Both the position numbers and the translations under genes were made by a program. A stretch of 64,000 nt of DNA, from assembly GCF_006345805.1 (NCBI RefSeq), contig NC_043003.1:92566001-92630000 (forward strand), in the 5' to 3' direction. The stretch comes from Octopus sinensis (taxonomy: Eukaryota). Position 1 is the first letter of the stretch; each line of letters starts with the position of its first letter. Below the pieces are notes generated by a model. It was not told where the DNA came from and made no database searches. It saw only the letters and a program-made list of their open reading frames with translations. Below, in pieces: positions 29,589 through 37,644 of this stretch.

Positions 29589-32500
29589 AATTTACGGTAA
29601 AAAATATTTCTTTACCTTCACCCGTTTAATACAATAAACGAGTAAATTGCATTGCAATAAAAAACATTTATGTATTTAGAATCTGGGTACTTTACCAACA
29701 GTATATTGGATGATATCCCATAGTGGGTTACACCCATAACCCCTATCTTACTTTGTACTATATATATATACAGCTTTGCTTATTTATATATACACATTTA
29801 AGTTTATTATTGTCGATGAGGTTGTTGTGATTGTGTCCAACAAGCAGGCTTATCATATTACAATTAATTTTTTTTTTAGATAAGAGTCAAAAACTAAAAA
29901 GACAATACAGATTTATTTGTTGTTCCCACTCATCCCTATTGTCCCTAATATCCAAATAAAATTTTACACTGCCCCTCCACTATGATGTAGTACCAGTCAC
30001 TTTGAGAAGAACTCAGATTTAAGTTTTCTTCTATCAGCTTTGTGTTACATAGGATGACAGACAACATCCTAGATATTCCATTAATTAGAGGATCTGTGTG
30101 GTATTATTCCCTCTTCAAGCCATTCAAAGTTAATAATAATACAAAGGGTAGAAATATTCTCATAACAGGCACTAGGGTTTATACTTTCATCTTTCTCTAA
30201 AGCACAAGTATCACTAAGAACTAAATATCAAAAGGTATTTTGCCCAACACTATTTTACCATTCTACTTATTTAAAAACAATCCAGAATAAGGCCCATCCT
30301 GCTCCCAGTTTTGTTTTTCAATGAAAACTTAACTATCACTATGGAAAAAAATCCAAGATAAAAAAAAAAATCTCTCAAGCTATTTTCAGAGAAAATCTTA
30401 CATTGATTAGAAAAATTATTTGGAATCATCAACCAATAGCAATCTGTTAAATTATGTTTATGAGATATTCTAACAACATATCTTGAGTAGATTTGATTCT
30501 AACACTGAAATAACTCATTTGAATTAATAAAGCATTTTGGACTGCAGAAGTCAGCAAATTAAACACTGACAGAATTACATTCTAAATGGCTTGCAAGATT
30601 TCTTTTCCTCAATTGCTTCTTTTTTTTCCTTCTTTTCTTTTAATTTCTTCCCTATACTGTAATGATTCCATTGGTCTATCCCAATCTAGACTTCTTTAGT
30701 TCACTTCAACTATTTGAGTTTAACATCCATGTTATTCATGCATAAATTCTCTATATCTCACTGATTCACATTTATTTCACTCTTCAAACAAAGTCATTCA
30801 CTTTCATGCACCAACATCATACCAGAAATATTTTCAATTTCGTTTTTTATTTTTACCAATAATTTAATTTCTTTCAGGTCATCTCTCAAAAACAGAAATT
30901 CCTTAGTCTTTGCCAAGTTTACCCTTTACTATTCCAGGGACTAGCAACTTCATCTGCCTCTTTCAAGAGTGCTCTTTTCTGAAGTCTAATGAGAGATTTT
31001 ATACATACAGGAGCGAAAATACAATACCTAATTGCACACTTACCTGGACCTCAAATCTCTTGTTAACATAACTTCTAGTAAGAGACTTATTTGAACAAGG
31101 GGAAAACATGAAAGGGGTAAAAGGGAGGGAGATTGTACATAAAGTCAAGTTCATTTGTTTGTCAGAGTTAACCCTTTAGCAATCAAACCGGCCATATCCG
31201 GCCAAAATATTTAACCTGTTTTATATTGAAACTGACCAGATCTCGCCTCTCACCTCAGCCCTACCATGTCATTCTAAAACTAAAATATCACATCACTGCA
31301 ATCTCTAAACTACAAGATAATGCATGATTAATTCAAACTATTTTAAATAAGCAAACATAACATTTGACAGAATAATCTGAACACTAAAGGGTCAAAGGAG
31401 ATTGAGTTTGTTACATAATGTGGAATGGGGCAATCAAAATTAAGTATGACAGTTCAATAAATTTACAATAGATGGACCGAGAGACAAGTACTGCTATTGA
31501 AGATCAAAGTGCCTAAAAATACATTCAGCATTATATAGCATAAATTAAGATTCTATATCTTTACAAACAAGAGACCAATTTGAGAACTATTTAGGTATAT
31601 TCAGGAAGAATTAGATAAACCATAAAACAACTCTAAAATTGCATAAGAATGATGAAAAACCTACAATCTACAAGACTTTTTTTTTTTTTTTTAGAATAAA
31701 ATAAATTCTTGAGATGAAATTGAAATGAAAGGAATTCCAGAAGAATGAAAAGCAAAACTACTTCACATCCTGCAAATCACATAAACCAACTGGAAAAATC
31801 TAGAAAACCTGTTAAAGTAAGCAAATGTCTTTTATATCTCATAAGCTGCACTGAATTGATAGGAATTCTACAACAATGCATTATGTATGGTAAGCAAAAC
31901 TATTTCATATTCTAAATATCATAGAGAATAATTGGAAAATCCCAGAAGCTAAAGTAATGAAAAATTCTGATAATCTCAAAAGCTGCATTGAATTGGTAGA
32001 AAATTCTAGAAAAAAGTATTGAAGTAAAAAACTGGTTTCAATTTGTAGAAGCTAAAATAATAAAAAGCTTGAATTTTATTGAATTGATGGAAAATTCCAG
32101 AATATGTTAAAAGGAAAAATATATTTCATATTTTGTGAGCCATATAGAACAATTGGAAAATTCCACAAGAACTTGCTAAAACAAACAAAACCTTTCATAA
32201 GCAGTAAAGAATTGATGGAAAACTGAATTAGCATATATTGAAGAAAGACATATCTATTTCATTGGAAAATTCCAGAATCTGCTAAAGCTAAACTAGACAA
32301 ATCCTTTATATCTCTTAAATAGCATTGAATTGATGAAAAATTCCATTCCAAAATAATGTATTTATGATAAGCAAAATTTCATATTCTAAATGGCATGCAG
32401 AAAAACTGGAACATTCTAGAAGAATTTGCTGAAGTAATCGAAGCTTATATCTCAATAAATTAATACAAAATTTTAGAATGTATTGTGGTAAGCAAAACCT

Positions 32501-36092: not shown

Positions 36093-37644
36093 TATTGGAG
36101 AGTTTTAGAGTCTGCCAGTTATAGAGATAAAAAGTATTATAATTAACAGATGTATTATATTATTAGAAAATTCCAGAATTTATCAGAAATGTTGAACAAA
36201 AATAAAGACTGTTATGGGAGGCCAACATAATAGTATTGGAAAATTCCAGAGTTTGTCACTTTTGATGACAAAAAGTAATGGTCTGCAAGAAAATCTAAAA
36301 GACCTAAGAAATAACAGAAAATTCCAGAGTGTCGGTTATAGTGACACATATAATGTTGGAAAACTGCTATAGCATTCCTCCACTGACAGACATCATAAAA
36401 GGAACATCAGAAAGTTCCAGAATGTCAGTTATAACGACAAAAGTTAAAGACTGTTATGGCAGGTCAGAATTAACAGTTATCAATAATATTTGAAAATTCC
36501 AGAATCTGTCAGTTATGAAGACAAAAGGTTAAACTGAAAAACTTCCTCGGAAGGCCAGAAAGAGTAGAAACTACTCAAAAGCTAGTAGGCAATATTATAA
36601 AATTAGAAATATTCATGGTGACAAAAGTTCTTACTAGAAAGCACCAGAGTTTGTTACTTAGAATAACAAAAAGATTGTTATGACACACTAGATGTCACAT
36701 ATGGTGGAAAATTCTATTGTCTATCAGTTATGATAACAAAAGGTAAGATTGGAAGAGTGCTGTAGCAGGTCAGAACTAAGAATGTCAGTTACACTAACAA
36801 AAAGTAATGTTGGAAGATTATATTATACAAGTAAGACTGGAAAATTCCGGAGTCTGTCATATATGGAGACAAAGAGTGAAAGACAGACAGCTTCAGAGCC
36901 AACTGGAAAATTCTAGTTTTACAGTTATGGTGATTGCTATAAGTGGCTAGAATAGACACATGTAATATTAGGAAATTCCAGAGTCTGTCATATTTGGTGA
37001 TCTCCAGGAAAGTTTTGCAAGTTATGCACCAATAAACAGTAAGTAGCATAACAATTTTGTAGAAAATACCTGTAAAAATTCTATGCAAACTCCAACATAT
37101 AAAAAAAAAAAGCTTACCGAAAATCTTACACAAAATAAAGAAATGCTTTGAATTCTAAAAGGTATCAGCATAGGACCAGCAAAGGCCATGTGCAGGGTCT
37201 TTGGAACTTCATATCTCACAACCAAGCCAAGAAAACAAAAGAGAAATGCAAAATATCATAATAGTGAGATGGAAACCTAAAACCCTGTCAAAATAATAAA
37301 AACAATAATAAATCATTCTAGAAAATGTCTCATATATCCCTAAAACCGTGATTAGAAGAAATGAAAAATTCCAGAGTTCAAAGGGTTAACGAAGAACAAT
37401 TCGACAAAACTACAGATGTCACTACGACTTTGTCACTTCATAATTTTATCAAAAACGCATATTTTTTTTAACTAAAATTTTCTACAAATAAGTCTTAGAT
37501 GGTGTAAATAACGATTATGTCGGAATTTGGTGTGAAAAAGAAAGTTGGAGGGAGGGATGACGTTTCGCATAATTCCCACCTCTCGACATTTTTATTTTCT
37601 TATAAATTTGAAAAACATATTTTTTAATGAAATTTTCAACAATA

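What the first reader, a model, noticed from the sequence alone, without database searches (positions are those of the whole stretch)
31730..37380. Repeat-built array of ~55 NFAT5/TonEBP-consensus sites inside the inositol-3-phosphate synthase gene: candidate osmotic super-enhancer
Seen: a 5.6-kb diverged tandem array in ISYNA1 intron 2, ~1.3 kb from exon 2, in which a (C/T)TGGAAAATTCCAG core recurs every ~65-95 bp in one orientation. There are 12 exact TGGAAAATTCC copies, plus TGGAAAATTCT (34075, 36705, 36904), TGGAAAGTTCC and single-mismatch variants. Established: TGGAAANNYNY is the TonE/ORE site of NFAT5/TonEBP, which TGGAAAATTCC fits exactly. MIPS is the rate-limiting step for the osmolyte myo-inositol and is hyperosmotically induced in euryhaline fish through clustered GGAA-core enhancers (OSRE1). 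Inference: tandem amplification built a homotypic cluster that could give strong or switch-like tonicity induction, which would be surprising in a largely stenohaline octopus. The GGAA-AA-TTCC inverted half-sites could instead bind Rel/NF-kB dimers. Caveat: other blocks (GTGACAAAAG, GACTGCTA, AGAACTAAC) are also partly conserved, and I anchored on the core by eye.
Basis: partly seen in the sequence, partly recalled or inferred. Interest (0 to 1): 0.88.

Follow-up and report, generated by a model that had tools for sequence, protein, structure and literature searches.

The report
Old intronic tandem repeat with stress-factor-like box
Intron 2 of an octopus-type inositol-3-phosphate synthase gene holds an old, decaying 5-kb tandem repeat in which each ~83-bp unit carries a near-palindromic GGAAAATTCC box; the box fits the salt-stress (NFAT5) site about as well as the heat-shock site and nearly a Rel/NF-kB site, so the "osmotic super-enhancer" is an untested idea.

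Summary
There are 12 exact TGGAAAATTCC copies (0.04 expected), all on one strand, and about 58 recognisable cores 65-95 bp apart between 31.79 and 37.0 kb. The array lies 1.3-1.7 kb from exon 2, inside the 21.2-kb intron 2 of a five-exon ISYNA1/MIPS gene on the minus strand. It is a diverged minisatellite (65-77% identity). It contains three copies of a ~730-bp nine-unit higher-order block and two later transposon insertions.

Only 24 cores meet the strict TonE consensus, not ~55, and none fits the tilapia OSRE1 17-mer. The same box matches the human HSP70 heat-shock element at every specified position. There are 30 two-unit and 11 three-unit heat-shock-element matches, and the box is one base from a kB site. 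Its conservation footprint is symmetric, not TonE-like.

Against the consensus, the core is the best-kept block (13.9% versus 24.5% divergence). Between in-register paralogous units the excess is small and not significant, so evidence for ongoing selection is weak. A probably cephalopod relative has a 1.4-kb intron 2 with no array. Genome-wide copy number and octopus orthologues could not be checked.

Verdict: a real repeat-built site cluster whose function and binding factor are unknown. Modest interest.

The parts
31787..32550 (+). Left sub-array: about 10 strongly diverged units with a two-unit (~131/240-bp) higher-order pattern. The flanks barely align to the main family, yet 4 of the cores are exact.
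32638..35450 (+). Main array, first part. It includes three copies of a ~730-bp, roughly nine-unit higher-order block (A 32640-33400, B 33399-34097, C 34096-~34830), followed by further single units.
35451..35783 (.). Fold-back (MITE-like) insertion that interrupts a unit. Its arms are 35509-35644 and 35648-35783, 95% complementary. It is flanked by the direct repeat AGTGTAATGATT (35439-35450 and 35782-35793).
35794..35908 (+). Array units lying between the two insertions.
35909..36089 (.). SINE-like 181-bp insertion inside a core. It is flanked by a perfect 12-bp target-site duplication, TAATATTGGAGA (35897-35908 and 36090-36101).
36090..37000 (+). Main array, second part (about 11 units), ending at ...AGGAAATTCCAGAGTCTGTCATATTTGGTGA.
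37352..37378 (+). Isolated degenerate core (TGAAAAATTCCAGAG) beyond the array end.
38462..38483 (+). Isolated core-like element CAGAAAATTCCAGAA. It is a perfect three-unit HSE pattern and lies about 190 bp from the exon-2 donor.
38665..38950 (-). ISYNA1 coding exon 2 ([30 protein letters not shown]...ENIILD-G), with donor GTGAGT.
39506..39631 (-). ISYNA1 coding exon 1 (MSAKPLKVKSPNVKYTDEYIEAEYDYTTTRVTDDGDFLIAEP), with donor GTACGT.
17025..17428 (-). ISYNA1 coding exon 3 (the codon completed here gives G, then WDISSANV...ASILEG). Together with exon 2 it defines intron 2 as 17429-38664 (21,236 bp).
39890..39900 (-). Promoter-proximal TonE-consensus site TGGAAAATTCT in the gene's sense orientation. 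It lies about 90 bp upstream of the TATA-like TATATAAA (39801-39794) and about 260 bp upstream of the ATG.

Best explanation
This is an old, locally amplified intronic minisatellite (a satellite-like tandem array), not a purpose-built enhancer.

Origin. A founder unit of about 83 bp carried the near-palindromic box CTGGAA-AA-TTCCAG. It also carried a second small inverted repeat, TGTCA-N8-TGACA. Unequal exchange multiplied it head-to-tail. The units first diverged into about nine types. A ~730-bp block of those types was then copied at least three times. Since then the array has decayed to 65-77% identity, lost parts of units and received two transposon insertions.

Consequence. As a by-product, intron 2 of ISYNA1 now carries a dense, single-orientation cluster of GGAA/TTCC sites. 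The matches are 24 TonE (TGGAAANNYNY), 30 two-unit and 11 three-unit heat-shock-element patterns, and 15 relaxed kB patterns.

Most likely present state. The cores are drifting at nearly the same rate as their flanks. If the chromatin is open, the array can still act as a multivalent landing pad, either a weak enhancer or a sink. The factor would be a dimeric or trimeric protein of the Rel-homology (NFAT5 or Rel) or HSF type.

Shown versus inferred. The anatomy, the higher-order structure, the motif counts and the conservation profile are shown. The mode of growth, the near-neutral present state and any protein binding are inferred.

My estimates. The chance that the array has a selected regulatory role for ISYNA1 is about 30%. 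The chance that this role is NFAT5-driven tonicity induction is about 10%.
For: - The units are head-to-tail, all on one strand, and confined to 31.8-37.0 kb.
- Pairwise identity is 65-75%, and there is a ~760-bp higher-order duplication. A three-way alignment of the higher-order copies shows that unit types and type-specific core variants are shared between copies, for example TGGAGAATTCA and TGGAACATTCT, which break TonE.
- Two insertions with intact 12-bp duplications lie inside units.
- Between independent gap-free paralogous alignments, core identity is 0.771 and flank identity 0.757 (p=0.71).
- Between in-register higher-order copies the core/flank values are .886/.788.814/.761 and .743/.781, none significant.
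- No terminal inverted repeats bound the array.
- There is no Rfam hit, and the predicted fold of a unit is unremarkable, z -1.7 and -1.9.
- The array is absent from the 1.44-kb intron 2 of a relative that shares the GIGGNNG motif, and TonE matches there are at chance, 6 against 5.25 expected.
- The motif is ambiguous between several factors.
Against: - Against the unit consensus, the core is clearly the best-kept block: 13.9% versus 24.5% divergence. The best composition-corrected 14-column window is exactly TGGAAAATTCCAGA, with permutation p=0.00035.
- An anchor-free count of every 11-mer of the consensus finds the core windows retained about twice as often as any other. At <=2 mismatches the counts are 47-50 versus 10-29, and exact copies number 10-12 versus 0-5.
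- In the left sub-array the flanks have diverged beyond alignment, yet 4 cores are exact.
- Core and flank mismatches per unit are uncorrelated.
- These results fit a period of constraint on the box. The paralogue tests have little power (191-201 core columns) and show a non-significant trend in the same direction.
- A same-sequence site lies in the proximal promoter. That placement has roughly a 1% chance, by my own estimate from 2.07 expected hits per 64 kb and a ~300-bp promoter target.
Confidence: 0.55

Rival explanations
1. The array is a homotypic cluster of TonE sites bound by mollusc NFAT5, and it gives strong or switch-like hypertonic induction of ISYNA1.
For: - 24 strict TGGAAANNYNY matches lie on one strand within 5.2 kb (4.8 per kb, against 0.27 per kb in the rest of the window).
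- The core differs by one base from the TGGAAAATTAC used in 8xTonE reporters, and NFAT5 is reported in molluscs (PMC11838016).
- Against the consensus, the core is the best-conserved block.
- A TonE-consensus site with the same 12-mer lies about 90 bp upstream of the TATA-like box.
- MIPS is osmotically induced through TGGAAAA-core elements in tilapia (PMC7374092).
Against: - The footprint is symmetric, and the TonE 'N' positions (.85.93.90) are kept as well as the specified ones.
- More than half of the cores fail the consensus.
- TonE-breaking variants are faithfully inherited between higher-order copies.
- There is no OSRE1 match.
- Known osmoresponsive elements lie within a few hundred bp of the start site, and NFAT5 binding even to OSRE1 is unproven (PMC7374092).
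- There is no significant recent constraint on the core.
- The array is absent from a related gene.
Confidence: 0.1
2. The box is a heat-shock element. The array recruits trimeric HSF under heat or proteotoxic stress, either to drive ISYNA1 or, like human satellite III, as a stress-body-type platform or sink.
For: - The consensus CTGGAAAATTCCAGA(G/A) equals the HSP70 proximal HSE probe core CTGGAATATTCCCGA at every specified position (PMC2173303).
- GAANNTTC occurs 30 times, against 12 in the remaining 58 kb.
- GAANNTTCNNGAA occurs 11 times in the array, against 0.59 expected for the whole window.
- The most conserved positions are G22-A23-A24 and T27-T28-C29, that is GAA..TTC.
- Variants such as GAACATTCTAGAA change only 'n' positions.
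- There is precedent: HSF1 binds tandem satellite III directly (PMC2173303).
Against: - The third unit is GAG rather than GAA in about two thirds of the units.
- T20 and G21, which the HSE does not specify, are also well kept (.90, .82).
- No link between HSF and MIPS is known to me.
- The same weak-constraint results apply.
Confidence: 0.1
3. The GGAA-AA-TTCC inverted half-sites bind a Rel/NF-kB-type dimer, making the array an immune or stress input to ISYNA1.
For: - The footprint is symmetric and centred on GGAA/TTCC.
- The relaxed pattern GGRRNWYYCC matches 15 times on the + strand and 18 on the - strand in the array, against 3 in the rest of the window.
Against: - The strict GGGRNWYYCC pattern matches 0 times on the + strand and once on the - strand.
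- The Dorsal-type pattern GGGWWWWCCM matches 0 times.
- Every unit lacks the third G.
Confidence: 0.07
4. The box is conserved for a non-transcriptional reason, as in the 'conserved boxes' of many satellites. It could bind a chromatin or structural protein. It could be a cruciform-prone palindrome that focuses exchange or conversion. Or it could be a sequence needed by whatever process amplified the units.
For: - The core is a 6+6 palindrome with a 2-nt centre, and the unit holds a second inverted repeat.
- The core's excess conservation is seen across unit types but not between recent copies. This fits an effect tied to the amplification phase.
- An unrelated metagenomic satellite (L013) is also built round a palindrome, CATGGAAATTTCCATG.
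Against: - No mechanism can be tested here.
- No terminal repeats or transposase remnants lie around the array.
Confidence: 0.1
5. The array encodes structured or small RNAs, with hairpins repeated in the intron.
For: Each unit can form two short hairpins on either strand.
Against: - The stems are only 5-7 bp, and the fold z-scores are -1.7 and -1.9.
- There is no Rfam family at gathering score.
- The footprint shows no compensatory pattern.
Confidence: 0.02

Closest known systems
Human satellite III (HSat3, GGAAT-type tandem repeat at 9q12)
   Same: It is a tandem repeat whose GGAA-type units are bound directly by HSF1 in heat shock (PMC2173303). It is activated through TonEBP/NFAT5 in hyperosmotic stress (review PMC10813801). 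The same two factor classes are in question here, and the sites were likewise created by repeat amplification.
   Different: HSat3 is a megabase pericentromeric satellite of 5-bp units and is transcribed as non-coding RNA. The array here is 5 kb of ~83-bp units inside a gene intron, with a full palindromic box in each unit. No binding or transcription data exist for it.
TonE/ORE (NFAT5/TonEBP site) and tilapia OSRE1 in the MIPS and IMPA1.1 promoters
   Same: They share the TGGAAAA core. The target gene is the same (MIPS). Several copies occur per gene.
   Different: OSRE1 elements are few, promoter-proximal (-232 to +56), and fit DDKGGAAWWDWWYDNRB, which no unit here fits. The array lies 0.8-8 kb inside the gene, and its footprint is symmetric.
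Canonical heat-shock element (HSP70 proximal HSE)
   Same: It has the same nGAAnnTTCnnGA pattern, and 11 units carry three perfect inverted nGAAn repeats.
   Different: Heat-shock elements normally occur once or a few times near promoters of chaperone genes, not as 58 units in an intron of a metabolic gene.
Repeat-derived site clusters acting as enhancers (GGAA microsatellites, VNTR enhancers)
   Same: They are homotypic clusters made by repeat expansion, and copy number sets the strength. This comparison rests on my own knowledge.
   Different: Those cases have binding and reporter evidence; here there is none.
Satellite DNAs with a conserved box and higher-order repeats
   Same: Features in common are the monomer size class, higher-order blocks, one strongly conserved box among variable segments, and decay with transposon insertions.
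   Different: Within this window the array is confined to one intron. Genome-wide distribution is unknown.

Membership tests
Tandem repeat / minisatellite with higher-order structure | Head-to-tail units in one orientation with a regular period | tested here: met
   About 58 units, all on the + strand, most spaced 65-95 bp apart.
Tandem repeat / minisatellite with higher-order structure | Multi-unit blocks repeated as a whole | tested here: met
   There are three ~730-bp copies that share unit types in the same order.
Dispersed satellite family | The same monomer present at many unrelated loci | not testable with these tools
   No copy lies elsewhere in the 64-kb window. No octopus genome is searchable here. 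The ORF-based search and the metagenome scan were uninformative.
TonE/ORE (NFAT5 site) | Sequence fits TGGAAANNYNY | tested here: inconclusive
   24 of about 58 cores fit, and the consensus core fits; the other cores do not.
TonE/ORE (NFAT5 site) | Asymmetric constraint: TGGAAA kept, with the N positions free | tested here: not met
   The footprint is symmetric. The N positions score .85.93 and .90, against .82-.97 for TGGAAA.
TonE/ORE (NFAT5 site) | NFAT5 binding and tonicity-dependent enhancer activity | not testable with these tools
   This needs EMSA or CUT&RUN and reporter assays.
OSRE1 (tilapia osmolality/salinity-responsive enhancer 1) | 17-mer consensus DDKGGAAWWDWWYDNRB, or the refined ...YNNRB | tested here: not met
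   There are 0 matches in the array or the promoter. The window has 4 matches against 3.87 expected by chance. The consensus is taken from PMC7374092.
OSRE1 (tilapia osmolality/salinity-responsive enhancer 1) | Position within a few hundred bp of the start site | tested here: not met
   The array lies about 2.8-8 kb downstream of the inferred start site.
Heat-shock element | At least three contiguous inverted nGAAn units | tested here: inconclusive
   11 units are perfect (0.59 expected in the window), and 30 have two units. The consensus third unit is GAG.
Heat-shock element | HSF trimer binding and heat inducibility | not testable with these tools
   This needs a binding assay and expression data.
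kB site (Rel/NF-kB) | GGGRNWYYCC | tested here: not met
   There are 0 matches on the + strand and 1 on the - strand in the array. Only the relaxed GGRRNWYYCC pattern fits.
Super-enhancer | Exceptional H3K27ac/Mediator/factor load over a multi-kb cluster | not testable with these tools
   This is a chromatin definition, and no such data are available here.

The most novel reading that the evidence does not exclude
A lineage-specific tandem amplification in an octopod gave the rate-limiting myo-inositol synthesis gene an intronic platform of 25-58 Rel-homology/NFAT5-type (or HSF-type) sites. The platform repeats the sequence of a promoter-proximal TonE-like element. It works as a copy-number-tuned, stress-responsive enhancer. 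This would be a case of a satellite being recruited as a homotypic super-enhancer for osmolyte production in a marine osmoconformer.
Probability: 0.1. Interest if true: 0.7.

Novelty: new member of a known kind. Interest (0 to 1): 0.3.

Why it matters
If the array really bound NFAT5, Rel or HSF and drove ISYNA1, it would show repeat expansion creating a strong stress-responsive enhancer in one step. It would also open the almost unstudied transcriptional control of organic osmolytes in cephalopods.

As it stands, the array is a good example of how a decaying satellite can mimic a 'designed' site cluster. A single palindromic founder box, copied 58 times, gives significant matches to three different stress-factor consensus sequences at once. 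The practical lesson is that motif density inside a repeat is not evidence of function. The informative test is whether cores outlast flanks between true paralogues or orthologues. Here they barely do.

Tried and rejected
1. TRF at minimum score 30 does not report the array because it is too diverged. I used fuzzy matching, nhmmer and self-BLAST instead.

2. I searched for orthologous arrays through exon-level protein homologues. The exon-3 search found a close relative (95% aa, 87-89% nt) only on 1.2-1.9-kb Logan contigs far from the array. The exon-2 search found nothing closer than 73%.

3. As an 'ORF trick', I concatenated 35 open frames from the array and searched the 5.8-billion-protein set for spurious ORFs called on other copies. 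Nothing scored E<=0.01, not even the window's own ORFs, so the result is uninformative.

4. I scanned the metagenome collection for three cores at unit spacing. It returned more than 120 loci, but none matches the monomer profile. They are chance hits, unrelated satellites and a CRISPR array.

5. Exact look-ups of the exon-2 ORF found nothing on record.

6. I rejected the structured-RNA reading.

7. I rejected the idea that the array is the internal repeat of a transposon, because no terminal inverted repeats flank it.

8. I rejected OSRE1 membership.

9. The pooled paralogue comparison first showed core 0.78 versus flank 0.70. That gap came largely from counting gaps as mismatches and from overlapping alignments, and it nearly vanished in the cleaner tests.

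10. Literature searches for octopus satellites, and for octopus salinity responses of ISYNA1, found nothing relevant.
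Full report
**1. What is there**

The sequence between about 31.79 and 37.0 kb is a tandem array.
- The 11-mer TGGAAAATTCC occurs 12 times in the 64-kb window. 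All copies are on the + strand and all lie between 32088 and 36848. Chance gives 0.04.
- At up to 1 mismatch there are 31 matches, against 2.07 expected. Of these, 28 lie in the array.
- A fuzzy search for TGGAAAATTCCAGA (up to 4 mismatches) finds 58 cores between 31.7 and 37.4 kb, mostly 65-95 bp apart.
- A profile built from the units finds 41 strong (E<1e-4) and about 17 weaker copies. All are on the + strand and inside 31.8-37.0 kb.
- The profile finds nothing convincing elsewhere in the window or in the related contigs.
- TRF does not call the array, because unit-to-unit identity is only 65-75%.
- The unit consensus is about 83 bp...AGAACTAACAGAAATATAATA-CTGGAAAATTCCAG-AGTCTGTCAGTTATGGTGACAAAAGGTAAAGACTGCTATAGCAGGCT.
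- The core is a 6+6 palindrome around AA. A second inverted repeat, TGTCA-N8-TGACA, follows it.

**2. Gene context**

The gene is an ISYNA1/MIPS gene on the minus strand.
- Conserved MIPS motifs, tblastn with homologues and splice-site reading give five coding exons: 39631-39506, 38950-38665, 17428-17025, 14196-13954 and 13154-12609. The product is 534 aa.
- Intron 2 runs from 38664 to 17429 and is 21,236 bp long.
- The core lies on the strand opposite to transcription.
- A TATA-like TATATAAA sits at 39801-39794.

**3. Anatomy and history**

- Self-comparison shows a ~760-bp duplication: 32640-33627 versus 33399-34319, 67% identity over 1 kb. A further copy lies at an offset of about 1450 bp.
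- A three-way alignment shows three copies of a roughly nine-unit higher-order block, at 32640-33400, 33399-34097 and 34096-~34830. The same unit types appear in the same order, and some whole units have been deleted.
- Type-specific core variants are inherited between copies, including ones that break the TonE consensus (TGGAGAATTCA, TGGAACATTCT).
- A left sub-array (31.79-32.55 kb) has its own two-unit pattern. Its flanks no longer align to the main family, yet it holds 4 exact cores.
- Two transposon-type insertions with intact 12-bp duplications interrupt units. One is a fold-back element at 35451-35783 (arms 95% complementary). The other is a 181-bp SINE-like element at 35909-36089.
- No terminal inverted repeats bound the array.

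Together this is the signature of an old minisatellite. It grew by unequal exchange and has been decaying since.

**4. Is the core special?**

Three tests gave a split answer.

(a) Column conservation over 41 profile-aligned units.
- Identity to consensus is .82-.98 across T20-C29, against about .78 for A/T positions and .64 for G/C positions elsewhere.
- Divergence from the consensus is 13.9% in the core and 24.5% in the flank.
- After correcting for base class, the best 14-column window is exactly TGGAAAATTCCAGA (permutation p=0.00035).
- Because this alignment is anchored partly by the core, I added test (b).

(b) An anchor-free count of every 11-mer window of the consensus.
- Core windows are retained 47-50 times at up to 2 mismatches and 10-12 times exactly.
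- Every other window is retained 10-29 times at up to 2 mismatches and 0-5 times exactly.

(c) Paralogous positions with the same genealogy. This is the cleanest test.
- In independent, gap-free long alignments the core is 77.1% identical and the flanks 75.7% (p=0.71).
- Between in-register higher-order copies the core/flank values are 88.6/78.8%, 81.4/76.1% and 74.3/78.1%. None is significant.

The core peak therefore reflects mostly old differences between unit types in the flanks. Since the last block duplication, the cores have decayed at close to the flank rate. Power is limited (about 200 core columns), so a modest constraint is not excluded.

**5. Which factor?**

- Strict TonE (TGGAAANNYNY) matches 24 cores on the + strand and 1 on the - strand. 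That is 4.8 per kb, against 0.27 per kb in the rest of the window, and it is not ~55.
- The 8xTonE reporter site TGGAAAATTAC differs from the core by one base, and NFAT5 is reported in molluscs (PMC11838016).
- The tilapia OSRE1 consensus DDKGGAAWWDWWYDNRB, and its refined form, matches no unit. The window has 4 matches against 3.87 expected. Those elements lie at -232 to +56, and NFAT5 binding to them is unproven (PMC7374092).
- The box also matches the heat-shock element. CTGGAAAATTCCAGA equals the HSP70 proximal HSE probe core CTGGAATATTCCCGA at every specified base (PMC2173303).
- GAANNTTC occurs 30 times in the array, against 12 outside it.
- GAANNTTCNNGAA occurs 11 times in the array, against 0.59 expected for the whole window.
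- Strict kB (GGGRNWYYCC) essentially fails. The relaxed GGRRNWYYCC pattern fits 15 times on the + strand and 18 on the - strand.
- The footprint is symmetric about the palindrome: G22/C29 .90/.90, A23/T28 .97/.98, A24/T27 .92/.93, T20/A31 .90/.85.
- That symmetry points to a symmetric dimer or trimer site, or simply to the founder palindrome, rather than to the asymmetric TonE.
- Sequence alone cannot choose between these factors.

**6. Comparative evidence**

- A 47-kb ENA contig (L001) carries an ISYNA1 orthologue that shares the unusual GIGGNNG motif, where other animals have GWGGNNG. It is probably another cephalopod. This is an inference.
- Its intron 2 is 1.44 kb, it has no unit match, and TonE matches are at chance (6 versus 5.25).
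- So the array is lineage-specific.
- A much closer relative (87-89% nucleotide identity, including intron sequence) exists only as 1.2-1.9-kb contigs around exon 3.
- Whether the unit family occurs at other loci in the genome could not be tested.

**7. A point in favour of a regulatory reading**

- TGGAAAATTCT lies in the gene's sense orientation at 39900-39890. It fits TonE and shares the 12-mer CTGGAAAATTCT with the array.
- The site is about 90 bp upstream of the TATA-like box.
- Hits at up to 1 mismatch are expected 2.07 times per 64 kb. By my estimate, the chance of one landing in a ~300-bp proximal promoter is roughly 1%.
- This suggests the gene may really respond to a factor that reads this box, whatever the status of the array.

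**8. Comparison with known systems**

- The nearest documented analogue is human satellite III. It is a GGAAT-type tandem repeat that HSF1 binds directly in heat shock (PMC2173303) and that is activated via TonEBP in hyperosmotic stress (PMC10813801).
- The same two factor classes are in question here. The scale, unit structure and genomic setting all differ.
- The array is not an OSRE1 cluster, and it cannot be called a super-enhancer without chromatin data.

**9. Verdict**

- The 'NFAT5 osmotic super-enhancer' is one of at least three equally good motif readings of a single founder palindrome copied about 58 times.
- Evidence for present-day selection on the cores is weak.
- Most likely (about 55%) the array is a near-neutrally decaying intronic minisatellite that incidentally offers a multivalent landing pad.
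- A selected regulatory role has perhaps a 30% chance, and the specific NFAT5/tonicity version about 10%.
- Novelty: a new member of a known kind (repeat-built site cluster, or satellite with a conserved box).
- Interest: 0.3.

Noticed in passing
window 39890-39900 (- strand), with TATA-like 39801-39794: A promoter-proximal TonE-consensus site, TGGAAAATTCT, lies in the gene's sense orientation about 90 bp upstream of a TATA-like box. It shares the 12-mer CTGGAAAATTCT with array units and is followed by CCAAAATTCCA. It is not part of a repeat unit.
   Followed up: partly
window 38878-38898 (- strand, exon 2); L001 10001-10240: The near-universal MIPS NAD-binding motif GWGGNNG reads GIGGNNG here and in the L001 orthologue (P0134). 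The other animal hits (P0121, P0122, P0128) keep W. This may be a cephalopod-lineage substitution.
   Followed up: partly
window 35451-35783: A fold-back, MITE-like insertion has 136-nt arms that are 95% complementary, separated by 3 nt. It is flanked by the direct repeat AGTGTAATGATT.
   Followed up: partly
window 35909-36089: A 181-bp SINE-like insertion lies inside a core and has a perfect 12-bp target-site duplication, TAATATTGGAGA.
   Followed up: partly
window 37640-37985; related copies at about 7468-7684 and 50903-51129, and inverted copies at 52.5-54.9 kb: A SINE-like dispersed element, which I took to be tRNA-derived from its sequence (not tested), is present in several copies in the window at 79-89% identity. 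I recognise it as the abundant octopus SINE. This supports an octopod origin.
   Followed up: no
window 8033-8129, within inverted repeat 7750-8047 / 8185-8478: An interstitial telomere-like (TTAGGG)n tract sits at the centre of a ~300-bp inverted repeat that is 90% identical.
   Followed up: no
window 51500-58500: This 7-kb block is dense with (TA)n, (CA)n and (GA)n microsatellites and SINE fragments. It is the only other strongly self-similar region in the window.
   Followed up: no
window 16564-16849 versus L002/L003: About 285 bp present in the window is absent from the closely related Logan contigs (SRR11869390 and SRR11869385). It is an indel just downstream of exon 3.
   Followed up: no
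L001 (ENA ERZ21867824, ctg93407l): The orthologous gene has the opposite intron proportions. Its intron 1 is about 8 kb and its intron 2 is 1.44 kb, whereas here intron 1 is 0.55 kb and intron 2 is 21.2 kb.
   Followed up: partly
L013 (Ga0126338_10101010) 250-1000: An unrelated metagenomic tandem repeat of roughly 55-bp units is built around the palindrome CATGGAAATTTCCATG. This shows that GGAAA/TTTCC palindromic boxes recur in other satellites.
   Followed up: no
window 38466-38480: A solitary CAGAAAATTCCAGAA lies 190 bp from the exon-2 donor and 1.1 kb beyond the array. It is a perfect three-unit HSE pattern and may be a last remnant of a once longer array.
   Followed up: partly
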